This document shows, piece by piece, positions 3,545 through 48,511 of a stretch of DNA of 64,000 nucleotides. Source of the DNA: Zygnema circumcarinatum SAG 698-1b (taxonomy: Eukaryota > Plantae > Zygnematophyceae); NCBI GenBank assembly GCA_037447605.1, contig CM074808.1, forward strand, positions 2,356,001 through 2,420,000. Direction: 5' to 3'. The notes below the pieces were generated by a model. It had not been told where the DNA came from and ran no database searches. It saw only the letters and a program-made list of their open reading frames with translations. The position numbers and the translations under genes were made by a program. Position 1 is the stretch's first letter; each line of letters begins with the position of its first letter.

Positions 3545-6936
<3,392 letters not shown>

Positions 6937-8493: not shown

Positions 8494-9708
8494 CTATCCA
8501 TCAGTGATAGGAAGCCGACCGTTGTTGTTATTCGTTTCCAAGCATACTCTCTTGATGCTTTCACGAAATTGTTGTGCCGACCCTCTTTCTGCCCACTCTT
8601 TGTCTGGCAATGTAAACGTGTTACTTGTCTCCCCATCATCTTCTCCCTCTTCCCATTCGTCTCTCAAATCAGCAAGCATGTTGTGTAAGATAACACATGC
8701 TTCTACTCTCTCTATAACAGGTAGTAATTCTTTTTTCTTTCGAACTTGTTGTGGTAGCAATTTTAAAGATGCGAATCTACTCTTAATAATCCCTATTGTG
8801 TGCTCATTTCGCACCCTAACTTTTGCAATACAGTAGTTAAATTCTGTATTTTCTCGAAAGATAGTGTGGGGATGCTTATATGGAACTAACATCCTTGTAG
8901 TTAACTTATAGCCTGCATCCCCTATAAGATACTGTCCTCTTGAGAAAAACTTTTCAGGCTGTTGACTTATAGCCATAGTACTAAAGACATAAGAATCTGC
9001 ACATGAACCAGCGTAACCAACTTGAAACCCTATGATACGCTTATCCATATCACAAATAACTTGCATGTTAAGTGAGTATCGACATTTTCTGTCGGAATAA
9101 ACTTCCCCATCTTCCCCTGGCCGTTGTGATAAAGGTAAAACTGTCCCATCTATAAACCCAACACAGCCTGGAAATCCTTCTTTTTCTAAAGTCTTTGATA
9201 TTTCTTGTCTTCTGCAAGCATTTGGCCACACAACCCATTCTTTTGAAAGAGATCTAAGTGCCTTTACAACTCGCTTTGTGAACAAAAATGTAGTCCCTTC
9301 TCCAATCCCAAACAATCGGGCTATCTCCCCGTGACTTGCCCCATTCCCGTTATGTCCTAATCTATATAATGCTATAGCTACTTGATAATGTACAGCAGTT
9401 TGAGGACACCTACTACCATTTTTAAAAACTTTATCTTTTTCAACTAATTTTACAAGTTGTGCAAATGCAGTTGTACTGGTACGAAAGGTTTGCCGAAAGC
9501 TACTTTCGTCCATATATAAACTATGGTAAAGTAAGTACTGAGAACTCTTCTTCAAGTTTAGACGGTCATGAAGATACCGTGTACCTTCAATATTCTTGTA
9601 CAATCCAAACAAAAATTGTATCTCTCTTACTTCCTTTGAAGACTGCATGTTGTTCCTGTCTTTCTTGCAAAAAGCGTAGACTATCAAGCCCATCAGTATT
9701 CTGAGCAT
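8494..9708 (-). CDS. PIF/Harbinger DDE transposase (DDE_Tnp_4 type), 404 aa, intronless, open frame
   Basis: HTH-like region (VAIALYRLG...IARLFGIGEGT) and catalytic motifs GFIDGT, CDMDKRI, GYAGSCADSYVF, LIGDAGY, RVRNEHTIGIIKSRF and CVILHNM. Confidence 0.95.
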   Translation of the reverse strand: MLRILMGLIVYAFCKKDRNNMQSSKEVREIQFLFGLYKNIEGTRYLHDRLNLKKSSQYLLYHSLYMDESSFRQTFRTSTTAFAQLVKLVEKDKVFKNGSRCPQTAVHYQVAIALYRLGHNGNGASHGEIARLFGIGEGTTFLFTKRVVKALRSLSKEWVVWPNACRRQEISKTLEKEGFPGCVGFIDGTVLPLSQRPGEDGEVYSDRKCRYSLNMQVICDMDKRIIGFQVGYAGSCADSYVFSTMAISQQPEKFFSRGQYLIGDAGYKLTTRMLVPYKHPHTIFRENTEFNYCIAKVRVRNEHTIGIIKSRFASLKLLPQQVRKKKELLPVIERVEACVILHNMLADLRDEWEEGEDDGETSNTFTLPDKEWAERGSAQQFRESIKRVCLETNNNNGRLPITDG

Positions 9709-24956: not shown

Positions 24957-27387
24957 ATGGCGACTGGATCGTCATCGGTGAGTTGGCCACGCTTGCGTAT
25001 CTGAGGTATCATTGGGAGCGGTCCAGAGTCGAGGAGGATTCTTTGCTGTAGACAAACTTTCATTTTTTCCACTGGCTCCGCTGCACTTGTTAAGCATATT
25101 TGCAACCGGACGTCCGCCGCCTACATTACAGATGCTAGTTATTCAAATGCATTGCAGCTGAACATGCAGGGTTTCGTTTTGTTGGCGTTCAGGTCGGTGG
25201 ATTGTTTACGGGATTCACAAGGCTTTCAAAGGCGCTGGCCTTTGTGCTGTGTGTTGGCTACCTGATCGTCACTCTGGTTCCTGCGGCACTCAACTATTTG
25301 GCTCTGGTTCCGGGAAAGTAAGACCTTGAAACCCTTTGAAAGATCAAAATGCAGCATGTAGCCCTCAGTTGGATACAAAGGCTATTTTTGGATGGTATTC
25401 TTTCATTATTTCGCAGTTTGATAATTGCTTTCACTCGCAACTGCTCCTAGGGGTGGCTTCAGCGGTGAGCAGGCCTTGACCCCGGTGGTACTGACTTTGT
25501 ACTCTCATGCTTGAGCTGCAGAACTATCCCGTTTGCTTGGAATTTAGTTTCTGCGGGGTATGTCGAGAAGTCCTTAATCAGTGTGAGTTTAGAGTACCTC
25601 TCTTCAGCTATGATTATTACAGAAGCAATCTGCTTGTTGTGGACGGAAAGAGACCTCCGGAAGAGAGAAGCAGACTTTTTCAATTCTTGTATCCTGTCGC
25701 TTGTTCCGAGTTATGTGCCACCATTGTGAGAATCCTGAATTTAACTTACTGTAGTGTGGTTCTGCAGCTTATTGTCAACTCTTTGGCGTTGCTCTTTCTT
25801 GGGAAGTCCCTAGAGCCGGTATGGGGCTCGAAGGAGTTCTTCTGGTTTATTGTGGTCGTAAACACATGGACCTCCATTTGTACTTTCGTCCTCATGATTG
25901 TTCTCTACTACAGCACATTGAGTGAGCGGTTCCTGTAAGTATTCGTGATGCATGGCAGCTTGCAGTTTTTTTTGTCAAGTCTCTTTGCATAAGATATTTG
26001 TTGCGTCTGACTGGTCCTGCGTGGTGCTATGTTATTGGAATGGGAAGCATATTTTTTTCTTGATAGTGAATGAGTTGCTCAATATCATCTAGTCCTATCC
26101 GCCTTCCTCGATTTCGCTTCTCTCTGAGGGAGGTCTTATCTATTCTAGCCGTGATCTTGGTCATCCAGGTATGCTCCGGGTGCAGCGATCTGCGGCTTTC
26201 ACGGAGTCGTGGCTGGTTTTCTTGTTGGAATCAAGCAGCTTATGCCCGACCAGGAAATCACTGCACTATTCATTCTCAAATTCCGAGCCAAGGTATCTCT
26301 GTTTTCAACTTCGTCTATTGTCTAATTAAGGATAAGGAGTCCCACAGGCAATGCCAACCGGCGAAGCGGGTAGTGTTCTCCGTAGATATTTGTGGGACGT
26401 TCTGGATGATTGAGGGTTGGTCTTTGGGCTTTTGTGGAACGCAGTGGTTGCCATCCCTATTTGTGCTTTTCTCTTCAGTTTTATTCACCGCCGTTGGTGA
26501 CCCCGTCCAATATCTACCATTCATTATCTTCGGAACCTACATCAGCTGGATATATCTCCGATTTTACCAAAGAAAATCGGAGGCAAACTTGAAAGGGGAT
26601 CCTAGTGAGGAGTTTGCCTTCACCACTTTCTTTCCAGAATTCTTGAGGTAATGTTCAATTTGAAATGGCCTTCGCAGCGCACTTGCATTCCGATGAAGTT
26701 AGACATTTTTCGGTCTGACCATGGAAAGCTTGAAGAACTCACTGTAACCGTTCTGTTGATTTGTTTTTTTGTTTGTTGTTCTCTTTTCCTCCATTATGAA
26801 AATCCTAAGCGACTGTGGTGATATGTCCATCTATATGCTTGCTGGATGCTTGCCTTTGCTGGCTTTGGTTGTATTGCAGTCTTGAGATCGGAAATATAGA
26901 GTCCTTCTAGCAGTCACAATGGAGTGCCTTACAAAAAAATTACTCTTTTTGTCAGGCCCATTGTTGGAACTATTGCCACAATTGTTGGGCGGCTTTTCTG
27001 TGGACGGAGGCCCGCAGTGGACAACGCCAATGACCAAGCCTTCATTGTCGCTGGAAAGCCACTACCTGGTTCAGACCCTATTGACGCTACGCGCCGAAGG
27101 TAGGATAAAGCCCTAAAATTTCTTTTTAGTTGCATGCTTTAAGTTTTATGTTTTTTCTGCCGATTTTTCTGTTTTGATCATTTCAGGTTGCAGATGCTGG
27201 ATGCAGGAGACAGGCCTGTAACCTGAATTTATGTCGATTTCCTAACAGTTTTCTAATATTTTGCAGAGAACGCGGTGCACGAGCGTTGGAGGAGCGGCTG
27301 GCAAAAGCATCTTCTGATGTTCCCCAAGATGTGGCAGCTGCGTCAAGTAGCGATGCGGTTCCTAAGGCGGCTGATGAGCAAGTGTAG
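24957..27387 (+). CDS. Rhomboid-like protein 19 / TMEM115 (DUF1751) membrane protein, multi-exon
   Basis: MATGSSS|VGGLFTGFTRLSKALAFVL...YLALVPGK, PFAWNLVSAGYVE, LLFLGKSLEPVWGSKEF, WLPSL...FGTYISWIYLRFYQ...GDPSEEFAFTTFFPEFLR, LPGSDPIDATRRR|ERGARALEERL...EQV*. Confidence 0.88.
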
Positions 27388-27781
27388 GCATGCTGAAGGG
27401 TTTGTGTTCTGGTCATTCGTCCCGTCTACTGCCCGCCATCTCCTTGCCATCTTATGGTTTATGTAAAGCAAAAAGTTTTGACTTAGGTCTGTCTTTCTGC
27501 AGCTCTTGCGCGGTTGTAATCTTGTCGTTCCTTAATCCCTGCGTCACTGTTTTCCGCTCTTGGTGGAAGCTCGTTCATTTGCAGCAGGACGACTATGGGC
27601 TGTCTGGGGTGCATGCAAAGTGTCAGAAAGCCTGCAGATTCAGATCTCTCTCAGGCTTTGTATGGAGAATATAATCGCTGAAGTGTGCGCGGCCTCATGG
27701 ACCATGGTGCCTGAGAATCAACATGAAGTGCATGACAAATACAGACATCAGGAACAGAGGAGTCATGAAAGCTATATTGAG

Positions 27782-27892
27782 GTGACGCAAAACTTAGTCG
27801 AATCAAAGTGACGCAGAACTTAGTCGAATCAAAGTGACGCAGGATATTATCGAATTGAGGTGATGCCGAACTTAGTCGTATTGATGTGACGT
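27782..27892 (+). repeat. 26-bp tandem minisatellite, ~4 copies
   Basis: GTGACGCAGAACTTAGTCGAATCAAA-like units start at 27782, 27808, 27834, 27860 and (partial) 27886. Confidence 0.85.
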
Positions 27893-28273
27893 ATTGCTGT
27901 AATTGTCTGTAGAGAACGTTCCATCCTTGAGCGATTACATTTGCTAGATGGTCTGATGGTTAGCAGATTGGACGATATTTTGTGGATTGAACATTGTCGT
28001 CACAAAGTGCAACCGAGAACGAGAAACATGACCACACAAAAACAGAAATCCATTCTAATCACTGGTCGACCCTCGTTATTTTTGTAATGAGTGAAATCAC
28101 ATACTCCAGCTTTAAAAAAGAAAAGCATCCCCATTCTAAAGAATCAGTGAAGAAACCGAAAACCCTATTGACAGCGACTGATTCTGCATAATCTAAGATA
28201 ATCTACGATGTAATTATGATGTAATTTCAGGAACAAGACATGCTTGATTTAAAGAAGACCCAGACGGCAAACC

Positions 28274-28343
28274 ACTAGCGACAAATCAGCCACATCAGAG
28301 ACTCTGAGAGCCTTTTCTGATGTAGCGTCACAAGTTCGCTAGC
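28274..28343 (-). promoter_or_regulatory. Eukaryotic SECIS element (GUGA core, type II-like apex) in the SELENOK 3' UTR
   Basis: Minus strand: helix I GCUAGCGA/UCGCUAGU; core 5'-GUGAC...UGAU-3'; 11-bp helix II GCUACAUCAGA/UCUGAUGUGGC; unpaired AAA followed by a mini-stem GGCUC/GAGUC. It lies ~115 nt downstream of the in-frame UGA. Confidence 0.9.
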
Positions 28344-28448
28344 CTCGTGCTCGCCATCATAAAACCGATCGCCGGCTGAGAAATGTGACCGCGGCACCTG
28401 CCACTTCAGCTGCTCCGCCAGAAGGCGAAGCAGTGAGAAGCAGATGCC

Positions 28449-29666
28449 CTACCGACCTCACGATCCACCTGGAGCAGTCGCACCTGCCAATGACACGCAT
28501 CGCAATAAGAGTCGTGAGACACATTCATTATCAGAAACACGGGCCTGAAGTGAGGCTGACCAAACTTCCAGTTGAAGTGTTTTAAATGACGACAATGAAG
28601 AGACACGTGCAGAACTCGTGATGAATAAGAGACCATGATAGAGATGTGATCCCATGGCGGAAGAGTCAATTGTCAGTCAAACGAGGCAAAAGGGCTGCGA
28701 TGGTTTCTACTTACAATGATCAATTCCTCTAACGTTGCTCATACCACTCAATCCACGTCTGGCACTACCCCCACCACCACCGCCACCCCTCCCGCCACCG
28801 GGCCCACCGGGACCTCCTCCACCTCCACCACCACCTCCATTGTAACCGCCCCACTTCCCGGTACCTCCTCCACCCTTACCCTTTGACTTCTTGACGGAAG
28901 CATCGGGCTGCAAAGACAAAGAAACATCAGCTTATCAGATGGCAAAAGTCTAGAGACTTCTGCCACAAAAGGTTGCATCCTGAAGGGGAGAAGAAAAAAT
29001 CCACAAGGAAACTGCATGCAAGGTTTGCCATTCTAAAAATACTTCCGGGACTTCTTCATCCACCAGGGCGTGTCCCCTTGTCACAGTTCCACTTTGACAT
29101 CCATCAGAAGTAACTCACAAAACAGAAAGACCCTTGATTTCCAGGGGGAGTTTACCCAAAGCAATGAATTCGAACATTCAAGAATTTATTCTCCAGAAAC
29201 GTCCATGAAAGCATGTCTGCTTCCTCAGGAATCACACTGACTTTCAGTTTTGGACAAGTAACGAAATATGCTCACCTGAACAAGTGTAGAAAAAAAGACG
29301 CCGATAAGATTCAACACCGCCCAAAAGAATTCTGAGATAATACTCAACCTCCAGGGCGACCGCTTATTCACGATTTCACCTGCAGCATCCCACACCTCAC
29401 CACATCACCGAACTTCATCACCTCCTTCATCACCTCTTTCGATTTCCCTGTACCAGTCCAATCTTTCGCTCCATCCTAATCAGCGAAATCTCTCACAGAA
29501 TCCTTGCCGGAAGAACCCTTTAATGCTTGCCAAGTACACAAGTAACAATTTGCTGCTCCAAATCCCTCAGTGTGCCACATCGCCACGAGAAGCGTCCCTC
29601 TACACATCATCTAAAAGACCTCATATGCTCTGCAGGTCGTGGCGTACCTCCTACGATGTACGCCAT
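28449..29666 (-). CDS. SELENOK: Selenoprotein K (SelK/SelG family), 116 aa, Sec (UGA) at 28458-28460
   Basis: Exons 29648-29666, 29276-29379, 28715-28907 and 28449-28483 (all GT-AG, 351 nt in total) give MAYIVGGEIVNKRSPWRLSIISEFFWAVLNLIGVFFSTLVQPDASVKKSKGK...GGPGG...SNVRGIDHCATAPGGS-U-GR*. This shows the SelK signature: N-terminal xRSPWR motif, one TM helix, a Gly-rich tail and a terminal UGR, plus a downstream SECIS. Confidence 0.93.
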
Positions 29667-29789
29667 GGTCTCCCTCCACCTCCCTCCCCGCCTCCCCCAG
29701 CGCCCTCCCCCCTGCCCTCTCCTCGCCGCTCCAGCGCCAATTGGCACCTGCCGGCCGCCTTCCTCGCCTTCTCGAACTCGACCAGCAAC

Positions 29790-29900
29790 GACCGTACGAT
29801 ATTCGTACGAGCTGCCGTACTGTATCGTATGGTAAAGTACACGCCTGTAGCGTAACGGAGCTGCGTTCGACGGATCCGCGTCCGTTCAGTTGTACTTGCC
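29790..29900. promoter_or_regulatory. GTAC cluster upstream of SELENOK
   Basis: Five GTAC (CCGTACG, TCGTACG, CCGTACT, AAGTACA, TTGTACT) within ~110 bp, 130-230 nt upstream of the ATG. Confidence 0.5.
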
Positions 29901-30918
29901 ATACTCCTATGCAGTGTCACGGACCGGCCTGATCCAGGAGTGGCCGACGGAAAATGCGAGAAGGCGGCGCCAGGTGTTGGCGGCCCACGGAACAGCACAC
30001 CAGCCAGCAAGGCGCACTCGGAAGCGCCGCATAATGCCGCCGATTGTCATTTGTTGACCTATCATAAGGCTCCACGTAGTTAGTCAGGCCTCTCAGTGGG
30101 CAGTTGGCCAATCAGGGGCTGTCACTGCTAAGGCTCAAGATCTATTGTCAGTGTTAAGTAGATGGGATGTCAGTGATGCTTGTTTGTCTTTTAGTGCTGG
30201 GCTTAGTATTTGTATTTGCTGTGTGGTTTGTTGTCTTGTTCTTCTTTTCTGCCTCTTCAGCTCCAGCAACAGATGCTAAGTATGAGAGAGAGAGAGAGAG
30301 TTCCATTGCATAGAGAGAAAGAGAAAGAGTCTTCTTGCTGATAGCATTTAGACATCCCATTCAGCCCAGCCAGACAAAGATTTCAGTGAGAAGATACTTT
30401 CATTGTAATGACAATCCCCAGCCAACCGCATTTGGCTGGGGTGACTTTCCAAAATACAACCTTTATCTAAGTTGAGTCCTGTTTTCCCTTTGTTGTCACT
30501 ATGCCAAGCTACCATCTTGTGAAATCCTGCCTTATGCTCGTAGCCCAATGACCAATGATAACTAGAAGCCTAGCTAAGAGACTAGCGGGAGGCGGGGAAG
30601 AGAACCCCCAAGGAAGGGAATAATAACTGGCATCGAGGTCGGCCCGTAGGTGGGAACATCGCCGGGGATCCCTCGTCTTCATTGCGGCGTACCTCACGAA
30701 TCCAGGATCACGGCTCATCTTTGCTGAGACCAGCGGCACCAACTGACCACGCCCGTTAGTTTATTACCGGACGTAGCGGGTGGCCGTCTGACACCTGGCC
30801 CAGCACCGGTGATCTTCTCTTAACCCCACTTATCTTGGTATCAGAGCTGAAGGTTTTGCAGATCCACGTACCTTGATACGTGAGGCTGCCGATCCTGTGA
30901 CCCGTGTCACAGCCGCCA

Positions 30919-33900: not shown

Positions 33901-36262
33901 GCACAAATCGATTTTAAGTACATGTCAACAAGACTATCTCGGCCGGGCGGGATGACCGCTTCCTTCCCTTATCATCTCTCAGTCCCTTGCCACTTCCTCG
34001 CCACTTCTTCCCCCTAAACGCCAGCCACGGGCGCAAGTCTCCTACCCAAAGATCACCATGTACCATGCGGTCGGCAGCCCCCATTCTTCCTATGGATCGG
34101 CAAATTCTGATACCGATGACGAGACTCCCCCTCCTGCTCCTCCGAGTCTAGCTCTCTGTGCACCGACGGAAGAACTTTTGCCGCCGGTGATAGCTAGACC
34201 CAGCTTTCCCCCCCACGAGACCATTAGTGATGAGGAGTGGCTAGAAATAGAGGGTCGATGCGACAGTCAGCCCCCTGCACTGGACAAGCATTCATACTAC
34301 GCTTAAGTGTCGCTACCGAATCATCTTAGTTTCGCATCTACATTCACTCACATTGGCAAGACTCCACCTGAGCAGAGCACTACATCGATACGGGATGCAC
34401 CTCCCTTCGCTATGACCATGACCCCTACCGCCTACCAAGAAAGCCGGCGTCGGTAACTTACGTATCGATGAGAACGTACGCCGCTTATTGAAATCCCGAG
34501 AAGGGCCTGGGCCAGCCCGCCGCTTCGCCTCTGAAAGCCGGATGGCACACCCCGCCTCAGGGAGACCATCGGAAACTAAATGCCATAACGGCGGGATCCC
34601 TATACATTACCGATGTGGACCTCCGATTCTCCACGGGCGCGCTCTCCCCGGCGACCTAAGTGGTTCTCGCACTTGACATGCAAATCCTCTCGCGTATCCC
34701 CGCGACAGCGCCGACGCTGCGAAGACTGGCTGCATGCCCACGCGCTACTGCGGCAAGTTGGACGGTGCTTCCTTTGGGTCAAGAATCTACCAGACTACCG
34801 CCTCGCCAACTGGTGTTCGCCCCCGCTGTGCCTTCGCTAACCTTACGTGGATGATGCTTCCCTCCACAGCAAGGACTGGTCCTCCCACCTGCAACACATT
34901 GACCAAGTCCTTCAACAGCTCATCAGTGCGCGTCTGAAGATTGCACCCAAGAAGTGCAAATGGGGCCACCAGGAGATCACTCATCTCGGGCACCGCCTCG
35001 GCATCAATGGCCTGAAACCATCACTCGACAAAATTGAAGCGATTGACCTTATGCCCATTCCACAGAATCTCACTCAGCTCAAGTCTTTCTTGGGACTCAC
35101 CTCTTTCTATCGCCGGTTCATTAAGGGCTATGCCCTTATCGCGCGTCCCCTACATGCCTTGGAGAAACACGGAGTCCACTACGAATGGAGCCGAGCGCAG
35201 GAGCTGGCCTTCCAGGCGCTCAAGAGTGCCCTCCTTCAGGCTCCTTGTCTGCATCAATTCGACCCCACCCTGCCCACCATTATTGACGCTGACTAGAGTC
35301 AGACAGGCTTCGGGGCAGTGGCCAGTCAAGCATTCTCGGATGGGGAACACCCAGTCAGTTATGCTAGCAGGGTTTGTTCAGAAACCGAGACCAAATACAG
35401 CCCTACTGAGGGTGAGGCCGCGGCTATCCTCTAGGCACTCGAGAAGTTCAAGCTCTTCACGGCCTACCAGCCCGTTATCATCCGGACTGACCACATGCCC
35501 CTCACCTGGCTGCACATCATGGCTACCCTACGCCCTAAGTTTGCACGATGGGTGATGAAGTTGGAGGAGTATAATGTACTTAAGGTCACTCACCGTCCCG
35601 GCCGTAGTCACGGCAATGCTGACGGCCTCAGTCGCAATCCTTCGGCTCCCCTCCTCTGTCACGATCCGGCCGTTCCTGAACCCATCCCTCCACCCACCCT
35701 CTTGAACCCTGAGCATCTTCCCATTGAGATTTTCATTGCAGATCAAGACTTACATGATGTCATATTCGCGGATGGGCTGATCGATATTCCGGCCACGGCC
35801 ACCACCCTCCATCGCTGGCAGGACCCTGACTTCACCCACGGCCACCCCCATGCAGATCCGTGGGAAATCCTCATGGATGACGATGGCGAAGCTCCCTTTC
35901 TTCCTCCCCATTTCCCCAACGCCAATGACGTCCATTCAGACTCCTCCCTTCTGCGCTACGTCATGACCCGCACATTGCCCCCTTTTCTCACGGACACCGA
36001 GAGGGCTCGGCTGCTCCGCCGCTCTCGGAATTTCTCTGTTGATGATGAAGGACAGATTCTCTACCTCCCCTCTGGTCTTCCTGTTCCTTTCCCCAACGAA
36101 CGCATGGAAATTCTGGACGTCGCCCACGCTGCCCAGCCTGGCGGCTTCCACCTTGGCCAGAAGAAGATGGTGGCCCTGCTTCAGGAGCGCTACTATTGGC
36201 CTGGCCTCCATGGCGCGGTGAGCCGCTACATCGAAACCTGCACCCGCTGCCAACGCGGCAAG
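30919..36262 (+). pseudogene. gag-pol of the Gypsy element, with frameshifts and stops
   Basis: Short ORF fragments; the cleanest are 34847-35296 (RT thumb) and 35495-36262 (RNase H end to integrase Zn finger). TAG stops interrupt RNase H. Confidence 0.85.
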
Positions 36263-44046: not shown

Positions 44047-47000
44047 ATGTATCTGTATAACTTGACTCTTCAAAAACCCACTGGAATCGCTTGCGCCATC
44101 TATGGCAGCTTCATGGGCAACCCTAATCCGAAGGAACAGGAGATCGTGGTGGGACGGGGAAAGGTTTTGGAGCTTCTTAGAGTTGATGCTAATGGGAAGC
44201 TGCAAACGCTTCACTCTGTGGAGGTTTTTGGTGTCATCCGCTCTCTTGTACAGTTTCGCTTAACCGGTTCACAAAAGGACTTCATTATAGTAGGCTCCGA
44301 TTCTGGAAGGATTGTTATTCTGGAGTACAACGTTGAAAGGAACCATTTTGACAAAGTTCACCAAGAAACGTTTGGCAAATCCGGTTGCAGAAGGATTGTG
44401 CCGGGACAGCATCTTGCGGTAGATCCCAAGGGCCGTGCCTGTATGATTGGAGCATGTGAAAAGCAGAAGCTGGTTTACGTTCTCAACAGAGACAACGCTG
44501 CGCGCCTCACAATCTCGTCTCCCTTAGAAGCTCACAAGTCGCATACCATAGTGTTTTCTCTAGTTGGGGTCGACTGTGGTTTTGACAACCCTATTTTTGC
44601 TGCGATAGAACTCGATTACTCGGAAGCCGATCAAGACAGCTCGGGACAAGCTGCAGCGGAGGTTGAGAAGCAGCTCACGTACTACGAGCTTGATTTAGGG
44701 TTGAATCACGTGGTGCGCAAGTGGGCCGAGCCCATAGATAATGGCGCCAATCTACTAGTGCAAGTACCTGGTGGTGCTGATGGACCAAGTGGTGTATTGA
44801 TTTGTGCTGAGAATTTTGTCATCTACAAACATCAAGGCCATCCGGATGTCCGTGCCCTCATTCCTCGCAGGTTTGATTTGCCTGCTGCTCGAGGTGTTTT
44901 GATTGTCACAACTGCGACACATAGGTCCAAGAATGGTTTTTTCTTTTTACTGCAAACGGAGTACGGGGACATTTTCAAGGTGACATTGGATTACAAAAAG
45001 GAGACAGACCAGGTGAATGAGCTGAAATTGAGTTACTTCGACACTATACCAGTCGCATCAGCACTTTGTGTGCTGAAGATGGGATTGCTGCTTGCAGCTT
45101 CAGAATTTGGGAATCATAGCCTGTACAGGTTTACTGGTCTTGGTGAGGATTCGGAAGTGGAATCATCGTCATCAATGTTGGAGGAAACAGAGGAAGGCTA
45201 TCGACCGATTTTCTTTTACCCTCGGAAGCTTCGCAATCTCATGCCCATAGACGAAGTGGAGTCTCTAATGCCCATAGTTGATATGAAGATCGCCAATCTG
45301 TTCGAGGAGGAAACACCCCAGATATTTGCTTTATGTGGCAAAGGCTCACGGTCTTCTCTGCGTATCCTTAAACCTGGGCTTGCAGTTCAGGAGATGGCTG
45401 TCTCACCCCTTCCTGGTGTGCCAAATGCGGTGTGGACTGTCAAAAAGAAAGTAACGGACGAGTTTGATCAGTACATTGTTGTGTCCTTTGTCAATGCCAC
45501 ACTGGTGCTCTCTATCGGAGAAACCGTCGAAGAAGTTAGTGATAGTGGGTTTTTAGACACTACATCTTCTCTGGCTGCTTCCCTTTTGGGTGAAGACTCT
45601 CTTATGCAGGTTCACCCAGGAGGCATTCGGCACATTAGGGCAGATGGCCGTATTAACGAATGGAAGACGCCCGGCAAAAAGAGTATAGTTAAGGTAGGTT
45701 GCAATAGGTTACAAGTGGTGATAGGGCTAAGCGGAGGCGAATTAATCTACTTTGAGATGGACATCACAGGGCAGCTTACAGAGATTGAGAAGAAGGAAAT
45801 GTCAGGGGATGTAGCTTGTCTGGACATTGCCCCTGTTCCAGAAGGACGACAGCGGTCGCGGTTTTTGGCAGTGGGCTCTTATGACAGCACTATTCGAGTG
45901 CTCTCCTTGGACCCAGATGACTGCATGCAGATTTTGAGTGTACAAGCAGTTTCATCACCTCCAGAGTCATTGCTTTTGCTAGAGGTCGTGGCTTCCTTGG
46001 GAGGTGAAGATGGAGCGGACAGGCCCGCCAGTGTTTTCCTCAACGCTGGCTTGCAAAATGGTGTGCTCCTGCGAACAGAGGTAGATATGGTGACAGGACA
46101 ACTGTCTGATACTAGGACAAGGTTCTTAGGTTTAAGGGCACCAAAGCTTTTTGCATGTAACATTCGTGAGAAAAGAGCTATGCTGTGCCTATCCAGTAGG
46201 CCGTGGCTTGGTTACACACTGCAAGGGCACTTTCACCTTACCCCCTTGTCATATGAAACTCTGGAATATGCGGCTTCATTTTCATCTGATCAGTGCCCCG
46301 AAGGTGTTGTGGCTGTTGCTGGAGAGAATTTGAGGGTTTTCACAATTGAGCGATTAGGAGAGAGCTTCAACCAGACCGTAGTTCCCTTGCGCTACACTCC
46401 TAGGAAATTCATTCTTCATCCTCAGTACAAGACACTCGTGATTTTGGAAGGTCATCAGGGTGCATTCACTGCAGAAGAGCTTGCTGCTCACCGTGCAGAA
46501 GCTCTTGAGAAAACTGGAGCTCCAGATGGAATGAAAGTGGAATCCGACAGGATGGAGAACGGAGGGGGGGATGATGAAGAAGAAGAGGAGGGAGATCCTC
46601 TTCCTATGGAGCAGTATGGTTACCCAAAGCAGACCCCAGATAAGTGGGCTTCCTGCATTCGAGTGTTAGAACCAAAGGATCAGGCAACTACATGTCTGTT
46701 GGAACTTCAAGATTCAGAAGCAGCAATTAGCCTATGCACCGTTAATTTCCATGGCAGGACAGATGGTGGTGCTCTGGTGGCAGTTGGGACGGCAAAGTCT
46801 CTTCAGTTTTGGCCTAAGAGAGAGGCAGCAGGAGGCTTCATTCACGTGTACAAAATGGTTGCAGATGGGAAGGAATTGGAGCTCGTACACAAGACACCTT
46901 TAGACGGTGTTCCAACTGCGTTGTGCGCATTTCAGGGCCGTCTGCTAGTTGGGATTGGACCTGTCTTACGAATTTACGATCTTGGGAAAAGGAAACTCCT

Positions 47001-48511
47001 TCGGAAGTGCGAAAATAAGAACTTTCCTAATACTATTTCGTCTATACACACATATGGAGATCGAATTTATGTGGGAGATATTCAAGAGGTGAGTCTCATT
47101 GGATTTGGTGTTCTTTGCATTTAACACGGAATAGGCAAGTTAGGTGTGGCATGTGTCGTGAATACGAGATGGGATTTTGCAGTGAGTTATACATGCCGTG
47201 AGTCATGCGCATAGGTAGTTTGGAAATCATGACGTTGATAAAACTAGCTGCGATCAGTTCTGATTAGTTTACTTGAAAAAGAGAATGATTGATAAGCATC
47301 GATTATCTGAAGTCACTACTGTAGACGCACTGTAGTTCGTCACGGAGGTGTCTCGGACGAAAAGGAACTCTGAAGGGTTTGCTACCCACAATTGCTCAAG
47401 TGTCTTAAGGACAAGTTATAATCTGTTTTTGGTCGCCTGATCCGGTGGCTTGCTGCAAGTCTCATGTTTGTCCTCCTGAGTCGACCAACGAAAACTGAGT
47501 TGTTCAGATGCAAAGGGGGGTTTTCCGATTCATGTTGTAGCAGTTTGAGCATGGTCTATAGCCAGTCAATACTGTGAGCAGGGAAGTATGCGAAAGCTTC
47601 GTTGATTCTGACCGTTCATGTGAAACTTCTTTGTGTGTAGTCGTTCCATTATGTGAAATACCGACGAGATGAGAACCAGCTGTACATATTTGCTGATGAT
47701 GTGAGCCCGCGATGGCTGACCTGTGCGCTACATGTAGACTTCGATACCATGGGTGGTGGAGATAAGTTTGGAAATATCTACTTCGTTCGCTTGCCAGCAG
47801 ATTTGTCTGAAGAAATTGAAGACGACCCGACAGGCGGCAGAATAAAGTGGGAGTCGGGCAAACTGAATGGAGCACCAAATAAAGTGGAGGAGGCAATTCA
47901 ATTCCACGTGGGGGATGTTGTCACCACCATGCAAAAGGCTTCCCTTATTCCCGGTGGTGGAGAATGTGTCATTTACGGCACTGTAATGGGCAGCATCGGC
48001 GCGCTCATGCCCTTCCTTTCTAGAGAAGATGTCGATTTTTTCTCGCATCTGGAGATGCACATCCGACAAGAGCATCCACCCCTTTGTGGACGTGATCATA
48101 TGGCCTACCGCTCTTCATATTTTCCTGTCAAGGTGAGCTGACGCTGCTTTCTTCTGCGTTTGGTGATAGCGGGGGGAGGCAGGGAGGAGGGGGGGCGAGG
48201 GAGGGAGGGAACCTTCACTTCCTGTCCCTAGCCTAAACATGGTTACATGTTCTGAATACGACTTTGATGTCCATATCTGACCTTGAATGGTTGCTCAGCA
48301 ATGACAAGCATGGGGTGGAGTTGTAGAAAGCCTTTCAATCTTGCATAACCTCCGGGATATGTCTCTTGTACAGGACGTGATTGACGGTGACCTTTGCGAG
48401 CAGTTCCCGTCGCTTCCAATGGACATGCAGCGCAAAATTGCGGATGAACTTGACAGAACGCCGGGCGAGATTTTGAAGAAGCTAGAAGATATCCGGAACC
48501 GTATTCTGTAG
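44047..48511 (+). CDS. SF3B3: Splicing factor 3B subunit 3 (SAP130/Rse1), 3 coding exons, ~1223 aa
   Basis: MYLYNLTLQ...GSDSGRIVILEY...ETFGKSGCRRIVPGQHLAVDPKGRA... Exons 44047-47088, 47641-48132 and 48374-48511; ends DVIDGDLCEQF...ILKKLEDIRNRIL*. Confidence 0.98.

What the first reader, a model, noticed from the sequence alone, without database searches (positions are those of the whole stretch)
28449..29666. Hidden UGA-recoded selenoprotein K in a plant-type genome
Four small exons, missed by the ORF track, splice to a 116-aa SelK ending GGS-TGA-GR-TAG, the same U-G-R-stop terminus as animal SELENOK, with a SECIS downstream. Established: land plants lack the Sec machinery and keep only Cys-type SelK homologues, while some green algae use Sec. 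The neighbours here are strongly plant-type (GALS-like GT92, ZIFL, Raf-C kinase). The window therefore points to a working Sec-recoding system in a streptophyte relatively close to land plants (inference). Standard annotation would truncate the protein at the UGA.
Basis: partly seen in the sequence, partly recalled or inferred. Interest (0 to 1): 0.9.

Follow-up and report, generated by a model that had tools for sequence, protein, structure and literature searches.

The report
Selenocysteine selenoprotein K gene, streptophyte alga
This is a real, expressed four-exon gene for selenoprotein K whose third-from-last codon, UGA, very probably encodes selenocysteine, in a green alga close to land plants; it is a sound gene-model catch, but such algae are already known to use selenocysteine.

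Summary
On the minus strand, four GT..AG-bounded exons (29666-29648, 29379-29276, 28907-28715, 28483-28449) give a 116-codon SelK reading frame ending GGS-UGA-GR-TAG.

- **Family:** exon 2 alone hits Pfam SelK_SelG (48 bits).
- **Expression:** contigs from four studies show introns 2 and 3 spliced. They carry the TGA and 3' UTR without a single difference.
- **SECIS:** a form-2 hairpin (GUGA core, AAAA loop) lies 129 nt after the UGA. It scores below Rfam's threshold (24 vs 35 bits). It is one of only two hits of a strict descriptor in 128 kb.
- **Relatives:** six other algal or environmental SelK loci all "stop" at TGA, then run 1-2 codons (GR, GS or R) to a second stop.
- **Orthology:** the nearest full-length relatives are bryophyte Cys-type SelK. 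The Sphagnum gene shares the intron positions and phases that could be read. Anchored on the last intron, U lines up with the first Cys of the plant "GSCC" end.

Not shown: splicing of intron 1 (no joint in the contigs; supported by homology only), the Sec machinery (outside this window), and Sec in the protein.

The scan has already reported several selenoproteins elsewhere in this genome. Published work documents the Sec machinery in all streptophyte algal classes. This is a new member of a known kind.

The parts
29648..29666 (-). Exon 1: ATG plus 6 1/3 codons (M-A-Y-I-V-G and the first base of Gly7)
   Evidence: The N-terminus M-x-Y-I..G matches all 14 aligned homologues. The phase-1 split of the Gly7 codon matches the acceptor of the Sphagnum gene. 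No RNA joint was seen.
29380..29647 (-). Intron 1 (268 nt, GT..AG); splicing inferred, not shown
   Evidence: Contigs of 3 runs run colinear through it. Unspliced, the exon 2 frame has a stop and no ATG upstream, and the 29666 ATG ends after 19 codons.
29276..29379 (-). Exon 2: conserved SelK core with the transmembrane stretch (residues 18-36)
   Evidence: Pfam PF10961 SelK_SelG, 48 bits, E 1.9e-12. 68 relatives found in 1.84 billion representatives. Hydropathy 1.92 over residues 18-36.
28908..29275 (-). Intron 2 (368 nt), phase 0
   Evidence: Joint 28907>29276 in 4 runs of 4 studies. Same position and phase as in Sphagnum.
28715..28907 (-). Exon 3: Gly-rich tail up to ...MSNVRGIDH
   Evidence: The tail from residue 42 to the end is 47% Gly. 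The motif SNVRG(I/V)DH is shared with bryophyte SelK.
28484..28714 (-). Intron 3 (231 nt), phase 1; splits the Cys105 codon
   Evidence: Joint in 4 runs, CT..AC on the + strand at cut +2. Same position, phase and GTAAGT donor as in Sphagnum.
28449..28483 (-). Exon 4 coding part: (C)ATAPGGS-UGA-GR-TAG
   Evidence: Contigs of 4 runs are identical here.
28458..28460 (-). In-frame UGA, codon 114 of 116: predicted selenocysteine
   Evidence: Homologous loci all have TGA followed by 1-2 codons and a second stop. It aligns with Cys of land-plant SelK.
28393..28448 (-). Strong hairpin starting at the first base after the TAG stop, 10 nt after the UGA; candidate recoding-helper, function unproven
   Evidence: -45.1 kcal/mol, z -5.0, 0 of 200 shuffles fold as well. 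A comparable hairpin is in L006 (z -5.6), a weak one in L001, and none in L003, L004 or L007.
28276..28341 (-). Form-2 SECIS element: GUGA core 28331-28328, AAAA 28316-28313, 3' GA 28287-28286, apical mini-stem
   Evidence: Rfam SECIS_1 24 bits, E 0.047 in a 900-nt search, full-length match. Fold -38 kcal/mol, z -4.4. One of 2 strict-descriptor hits in 128 kb.

Best explanation
The locus is the single-copy-looking SelK (SELENOK) orthologue of a streptophyte alga. It encodes a small membrane protein with three parts:
- a short N-terminus;
- one transmembrane helix (about residues 18-36);
- a Gly-rich disordered tail whose third-from-last residue is selenocysteine.

Proposed mechanism (inferred from how eukaryotic Sec decoding is known to work):
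- The ribosome reaches UGA114 in the last exon. That position keeps the mRNA clear of nonsense-mediated decay.
- The form-2 SECIS in the 3' UTR, 129 nt downstream, recruits SBP2 and EFSec carrying Sec-tRNA(Sec).
- Sec is inserted, and translation ends two codons later at TAG.
- The hairpin that begins right after the TAG may slow the ribosome or hinder release-factor action at the UGA. This is speculative.

Shown here: the gene structure, splicing of introns 2 and 3, the intact TGA, family membership, the SECIS-like fold, and the Sec/Cys correspondence with land-plant orthologues.

Inferred: splicing of intron 1, actual Sec insertion, the cellular role (by analogy with animal SELENOK, an ER membrane protein acting in ERAD and protein palmitoylation), and any role of the post-stop hairpin.
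For: - Gene model and terminus.
- Pfam SelK_SelG on exon 2, 48 bits.
- Spliced joints for introns 2 and 3 in 4 runs of 4 studies, at depths far above the intron-retaining contigs, with zero differences over exon 4, the UGA and the SECIS.
- SECIS: Rfam full-length match, stable fold, and a strict descriptor giving 2 hits in 128 kb against 0.15 in shuffles. The GUGA_AA pattern is usual in green-algal SECIS (PMC3473315).
- Six homologous SelK loci from other algae or environmental samples all show TGA, then GR, GS or R, then a stop. SECIS-like elements are present in L001, L003 and L004.
- Nearest full-length relatives are bryophyte Cys-SelK.
- The intron positions and phases that could be read in the Sphagnum gene match. 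An ungapped comparison from the last intron places U opposite the first Cys of GS-CC.
- Scan notes report other selenoprotein genes and SBP2, SepSecS and EFSec genes elsewhere in this genome (not checked here).
- Literature: Sec machinery is present in all streptophyte algal classes (PMC6627142).
Against: - The Rfam SECIS_1 score (24 bits) is below the gathering score (35). The hit is absent from the whole-window searches.
- No joint for intron 1 appears in any of 4 runs. Contigs run straight through it at 2-4 times the depth of the other introns.
- No tRNA-Sec or machinery gene lies in this window.
- No zygnematophyte orthologue was found, so conservation of the U-G-R end and of the SECIS among close relatives is untested.
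- No protein-level evidence exists.
Confidence: 0.85

Rival explanations
1. The UGA is a genuine stop. The alga makes a 113-residue SelK ending ...APGGS without Sec or Cys at the active position, and the SECIS-like hairpin is a relic or chance structure.
For: - The SECIS is below Rfam's threshold.
- Sec insertion is not shown.
- Machinery was not tested in this window.
Against: - TGA rather than TAA or TAG is used in all 7 loci. It is always followed by 1-2 sense codons and a second stop.
- The hairpin has every SECIS core feature and is almost unique in 128 kb.
- The position matches a conserved Cys in land plants.
Confidence: 0.07
2. The 5' end of the model is wrong. Intron 1 is not removed, or another first exon is used, so the product differs at its N-terminus or the mRNA is mostly non-productive.
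For: - No intron 1 joint in 4 runs.
- Colinear contigs from 29276 to 29763.
- Intron 1 depth is 2-4 times that of introns 2 and 3.
Against: - Without the splice, exon 2 has no in-frame ATG.
- M-A-Y-I-x-G matches the family N-terminus, and exon 2 starts at family position 7-8.
- The Sphagnum gene has its acceptor at the same phase-1 Gly7 position.
- A spliced 5' end of about 30-50 nt would form a short dead-end branch that contig builders tend to clip (inference). The tool itself states that contigs show presence, not absence.
Confidence: 0.1
3. The functional product comes from the intron-3-retaining transcript. That transcript ends ...IDH-C-K-stop, a Cys-near-terminal SelK that needs no recoding.
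For: - Reading through the donor gives Cys-Lys-stop.
- Intron-retaining contigs exist in all 4 runs.
Against: - Their depth is only about 2-16% of the spliced joint (7.9-44 against 242-481).
- The isoform lacks the conserved G-S-(U/C) end.
- The intron and its GTAAGT donor are conserved with Sphagnum, where the exon beyond it is coding.
Confidence: 0.03

Closest known systems
Animal SELENOK (human selenoprotein K)
   Same: - Pfam SelK_SelG core.
- Short N-terminus M-x-Y-I, one transmembrane helix, and a Gly/Pro-rich tail.
- Sec third from the end in a G-G-x-U-G-R-stop terminus.
- SECIS in the 3' UTR.

The human terminus is quoted from my own knowledge. Animal-like truncated forms such as P0205 ending ...PPPMAGGG are.
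   Different: - The tail here is longer and far richer in Gly (47%).
- The SECIS core is GUGA, not AUGA.
- A strong hairpin directly follows the stop codon.
- Function in algae is untested.
Green-algal Sec-type SelK (loci L001 and L003-L007; Chlamydomonas SelK from the literature)
   Same: - UGA followed by GR, GS or R and a second stop.
- SECIS-like elements in the 3' UTR.
- GUGA_AA SECIS cores are common in green algae (PMC3473315).
   Different: - Those proteins end C-GGGG-U. This one ends APGGS-U and has its nearest Cys nine residues upstream of U.
- Its sequence is closer to bryophyte SelK than to these algal forms.
Land-plant Cys-type SelK homologues (for example Sphagnum fallax BDL97_13G031300, Marchantia, Riccia; 'like AT4G08230')
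   Same: - Highest similarity over the whole length.
- The motif SNVRG(I/V)DH.
- Identical intron positions and phases wherever they could be read: the intron 1 acceptor, intron 2 and intron 3.
   Different: - Land plants end CGSCC(G/AG) with ordinary Cys codons, and land plants are reported to lack the Sec machinery (PMC6627142).
- Here the first Cys of CC is replaced by UGA/Sec, and a SECIS is present.

Membership tests
SelK/SelG family (Pfam PF10961) | Significant match to the family profile | tested here: met
   Exon 2 alone: 48 bits against a cut-off of 23.3, E 1.9e-12.
SelK/SelG family (Pfam PF10961) | Short N-terminus followed by one hydrophobic transmembrane stretch, then a Gly/Pro-rich tail | tested here: met
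   Residues 18-36 have mean hydropathy 1.92. The tail is 47% Gly. It aligns with 14 homologues.
SelK/SelG family (Pfam PF10961) | Sec or Cys 1-3 residues from the C-terminus | tested here: met
   UGA is codon 114 of 116. It aligns with U of the algal forms and with Cys of the land-plant forms.
Eukaryotic SECIS element (Rfam RF00031) | Score at or above the curated gathering threshold | tested here: not met
   24 bits against 35. E 0.047 in a 900-nt search. Not listed in the whole-window searches. The SelK SECIS of L001 scores about the same, 24.9 bits.
Eukaryotic SECIS element (Rfam RF00031) | Core quartet (A/G)UGA...GA, helix 2 of about 11-12 pairs, unpaired AA about 11 nt after the core, helix 1 below an internal loop, located in the 3' UTR | tested here: met
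   GUGA at 28331-28328, then 11 nt, then AAAA. The 3' side reads CUGAU. Helix 2 has 12 pairs and helix 1 has 8 pairs. The core lies 129 nt after the UGA.
Eukaryotic SECIS element (Rfam RF00031) | Binds SBP2 and supports UGA recoding | not testable with these tools
   Needs a binding or reporter assay.
Sec-decoding organism | tRNA-Sec, EFSec, SBP2, SecS, PSTK and SPS2 present in the genome | not testable with these tools
   No tRNA in this window. The rest of the genome cannot be reached. Scan notes list SBP2, SepSecS and EFSec genes elsewhere, unchecked.
Expressed, spliced gene | RNA-derived joints at the predicted splice sites | tested here: inconclusive
   Introns 2 and 3 are met in 4 runs of 4 studies. 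Intron 1 is not seen.

The most novel reading that the evidence does not exclude
This would be the Sec-type SelK most directly comparable with the land-plant gene. The two share the intron positions and phases that could be read, and their last exons differ in length by one codon, with Sec opposite the first Cys of the embryophyte GS-CC end. That would pin the Sec-to-Cys swap of one gene to the origin of land plants.

If the genome is a desmid (Closterium-like, as other scan notes say), it also helps answer an open question in Liang et al. 2019. Their Closterium lunula transcriptome showed no machinery and no selenoprotein.

In addition, the very stable hairpin that starts at the first base after the true stop may be a recoding helper for a UGA that sits only two codons from the stop. 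It recurs in one distant SelK locus and is noted beside another selenoprotein gene of this genome.
Probability: 0.3. Interest if true: 0.45.

Novelty: new member of a known kind. Interest (0 to 1): 0.3.

Why it matters
- **Annotation:** standard pipelines will end this protein at ...APGGS and lose the redox residue. All six relatives I fetched were truncated in just this way.
- **Evolution:** the gene gives a clean, intron-anchored Sec/Cys pair between a streptophyte alga and bryophytes. That is useful for dating and describing the loss of selenocysteine at the water-to-land transition.
- **Limits:** it does not change the picture. Sec use by streptophyte algae is published, and this scan has already confirmed several selenoproteins in the same genome.

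Tried and rejected
- **Rfam at gathering thresholds** on the whole window: nothing. The whole-window E-value search did not list the SECIS and listed no other SECIS_1 match either.
- **ARAGORN:** no tRNA in the window.
- **Zygnematophyte orthologues:** two database searches (Sphagnum SelK as query; a profile including the window's exon pieces) returned land plants, chlorophytes, oomycetes and unnamed contigs. Nothing was close to this gene.
- **Metagenome scan** returned only Sphagnum loci. Earlier attempts failed as too short or too gappy.
- **Proteins P0050 and P0017**, possible streptophyte-algal forms, are not on record as genes.
- **Covariance model from the algal SelK SECIS elements:** dropped, because MAFFT did not align the three hairpins structurally.
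- **Full 113/116-residue protein as a query:** not used. It has no reference, and the tools take no read-through protein, so exon pieces and homologue ids were used instead.
- **Genus:** could not be verified. The best named SF3B3 hits are bryophytes at 80%.
- **Second SECIS-descriptor hit at 35073-35022 (-):** lies in a retroelement region, antisense to an ORF that overlaps its integrase ORF. Judged to be chance.

Full report
**Observation**

The feature is on the minus strand. I located the exon ends exactly and spliced them.

| Part | Coordinates |
|---|---|
| Exon 1 | 29666-29648 |
| Exon 2 | 29379-29276 |
| Exon 3 | 28907-28715 |
| Exon 4 (coding part) | 28483-28449 |
| UGA, codon 114 | 28460-28458 |
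| TAG stop | 28451-28449 |

- The four exons total 351 nt, that is 116 codons plus TAG.
- All three introns are GT..AG, with good donors (GTACGC, GTGAGC, GTAAGT) and CAG acceptors.
- The ATG sits in a GACCATGG context.
- The product ends ...GIDH-C-ATAPGGS-U-GR.

**Family**

- Exon 2 alone (35 residues) scores 48 bits against Pfam SelK_SelG, cut-off 23.3.
- In an exhaustive search of 1.84 billion representatives it finds 68 relatives. In most full-length ones the match starts at residue 7 or 8, which leaves room for exactly the six-residue exon 1.
- Many of these relatives end in ...GG...GGGG or ...GGS. That is the signature of SelK proteins truncated at the Sec codon by gene callers.
- The protein has one hydrophobic stretch (residues 18-36) and a tail that is 47% Gly.

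**Expression and sequence accuracy**

Contigs of four runs from four different studies of one organism were laid on 27500-30200.

- All four show the joints 28483>28715 and 28907>29276, which on the minus strand are GT..AG.
- Joint depths are 242-481 and 64-196. The intron-retaining contigs have depths of 8-51.
- Such joints can only come from spliced RNA.
- The contig covering exon 4, the UGA, the post-stop hairpin and the SECIS is identical to the window in all four runs. The TGA is therefore not an assembly error.

Intron 1 is the weak point.

- No joint is reported for it.
- Contigs of three runs run colinear from exon 2 through intron 1 and exon 1. They reach 29675-29763 and have 2-4 times the depth of the other introns.
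- Unspliced, the exon 2 frame has a stop and no ATG upstream, and the 29666 ATG would end after 19 codons. A SelK product therefore needs this splice.
- Exon 1 supplies M-A-Y-I-V-G, which matches the M-x-Y-(I/V) start of all 14 aligned homologues.
- In the Sphagnum gene, exon 2 begins at the same phase-1 position inside the Gly7 codon.
- My inference is that the spliced 5' end, about 30-50 nt, is a short dead-end branch that the contig builder clipped. Contigs show presence, not absence. This step remains unproven.

**The SECIS**

- A local Rfam search gives a full-length SECIS_1 match at 28341-28276 (-). It scores 24 bits, E 0.047, below the gathering score of 35.
- It is absent from the whole-window searches, which list no other SECIS_1 match either.
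- The anatomy is complete:
  - an 8-bp lower helix and an internal loop;
  - U-GUGA on the 5' side and C-UGA-U on the 3' side;
  - a 12-pair upper helix;
  - AAAA starting 11 nt after the core, and an apical mini-stem (form 2).
- The fold is -38 kcal/mol with z -4.4.
- I wrote a strict descriptor requiring (A/G)UGA, AA at the right distance, at least 9 helix-2 pairs, a 3' GA and at least 6 helix-1 pairs.
  - It hits twice in both strands of the 64-kb window.
  - Block-shuffled controls give 0.15 hits.
  - One hit is this element, 129 nt after the UGA.
  - The other lies in a retroelement region, antisense to an ORF that overlaps the integrase ORF.
- A GUGA core is usual, not odd, in green algae (PMC3473315).
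- The SelK SECIS of a distant algal transcript (L001) gets nearly the same sub-threshold Rfam score, 24.9 bits. The Rfam model simply fits algal elements poorly.

**Comparative evidence for recoding**

- I fetched DNA for six homologous SelK loci, from Logan transcript contigs and JGI environmental contigs.
- In all six the called stop is TGA. It is followed by GR, GS or R and then a second stop.
- Seven of seven loci use TGA at this spot with a 1-2 codon tail. That is not what ordinary termination would give.
- SECIS-like hairpins are found downstream in L001, L003 and L004. I did not find them in L006 or L007.

**Relation to land plants**

- By pairwise score, the nearest full-length relatives are bryophyte SelK proteins: Riccia, Sphagnum and Marchantia.
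- Every land-plant hit whose C-terminus I read ends in CGSCC(G/AG) with ordinary Cys codons.
- Genomic Sphagnum loci from bog metagenomes show three matches to the window gene:
  - intron 2 at the same phase-0 position, after ...TL(F/V)(S/Q);
  - intron 3 at the same phase-1 position, right after ...GIDH, with the same T|GTAAGT donor;
  - the acceptor of intron 1 at the same phase-1 Gly7 position.
- Counted from the last intron without gaps, the last exons read C-A-T-A-P-G-G-S-U-G-R here and S-A-V-P-P-C-G-S-C-C-A-G in Sphagnum.
- Sec therefore lies opposite the first Cys of the plant CC pair.
- An SF3B3 exon in the same window is 80% identical to bryophyte orthologues. The contig is therefore streptophyte, not a contaminant.
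- The genus could not be verified. Other notes of this scan call the genome Closterium-like.

**Mechanism**

The most likely mechanism is standard eukaryotic Sec decoding (confidence 0.85).

- The SECIS recruits SBP2 and EFSec carrying Sec-tRNA(Sec) to the UGA.
- The UGA lies in the last exon, so the mRNA is not a target of nonsense-mediated decay.
- Translation ends two codons later.

A second element deserves mention. A very stable hairpin (28448-28393, -45 kcal/mol, z -5.0) starts at the first base after the TAG, 10 nt after the UGA.

- A comparable hairpin follows the stop in L006 (z -5.6).
- L001 has a weak one, and L003, L004 and L007 have none.
- A scan note reports a hairpin in the same position beside this genome's thioredoxin reductase gene.
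- It may act like the recoding-helper stem-loops described next to some animal Sec codons (my own knowledge). This is speculative.

**What is known**

- Liang et al. [quoted passage not shown]
- A 2026 review says the same for tRNA-Sec (PMC13578239).
- One gap remains.
  - For Desmidiales, that study had only transcriptomes with 0-2 selenoproteins.
  - Closterium lunula showed none, and no machinery.
  - The authors left open whether desmids keep the system.
  - I found no later paper in the held library that addresses this.
  - If this genome is a desmid, this gene and the other selenoprotein genes noted by the scan fill that gap.

**Machinery**

- No tRNA is found in the window, and the rest of the genome is out of reach.
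- Scan notes list SBP2, SepSecS and EFSec genes on other pieces of the same genome, unchecked.
- Follow-up agents in this scan also reported GPX, SelT, TR, SelU and SelH selenoprotein genes there; I did not check these either.
- I treat all of these as leads only.

**Verdict**

This is a genuine, expressed Sec-type SelK gene and a good annotation catch. It is a tidy Sec/Cys comparison with land plants, but a new member of a known kind. Interest is 0.3.

Noticed in passing
window 28393-28448 (-): A very stable hairpin (-45 kcal/mol, z -5.0) begins at the first base after the SelK TAG stop, 10 nt after the UGA. A similar one follows the stop in the distant SelK locus L006. L001 has a weak one, and three others have none. 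It may be a recoding helper.
   Followed up: partly
window 35022-35073 (-): This is the only other hit of my strict SECIS descriptor in the window. It lies in a retroelement region, antisense to an ORF that overlaps the integrase ORF, and is probably chance.
   Followed up: partly
window 29846-29898: A 53-nt segment about 180 nt upstream of the SelK ATG. Contigs of all four runs join it to several different unrelated flanks (loose ends at 29844-29846 and 29898). It is single copy in the window, so it is likely a short repeat present elsewhere in the genome or transcriptome.
   Followed up: partly
window 28484-28714 (-): Retention of intron 3 would end the protein ...IDH-C-K-stop, a Cys-near-terminal form. 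Retained contigs exist in all four runs at about 2-16% of the spliced depth.
   Followed up: partly
window 25507-26651 (+): A DUF1751 (TMEM115-like) membrane-protein gene is convergent with SelK. The RNA contig that carries SelK exon 4 runs on for 1.4-2.2 kb, so the two 3' ends probably overlap or abut.
   Followed up: no
window 4000-6000: Extreme strand asymmetry (GC skew -0.83, AT skew -0.64), with long ORFs in several frames on both strands and palindromic miRNA-like Rfam matches at 4361-4449. This looks like a low-complexity or repeat block.
   Followed up: no
window 8494-9708 (-): An intact 404-residue ORF with a Harbinger-type DDE_Tnp_4 transposase domain.
   Followed up: no
window 44047-47124 (+): A single uninterrupted 1025-codon exon of SF3B3 (spliceosome-associated protein 130), 80% identical to bryophyte orthologues.
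   Followed up: partly
L010 1640-1850 (Sphagnum SelK, bog metagenome): The land-plant Cys-type SelK gene ends ...CCAG with TGA as its ordinary stop. Its last intron has the same T|GTAAGT donor as the algal gene.
   Followed up: partly
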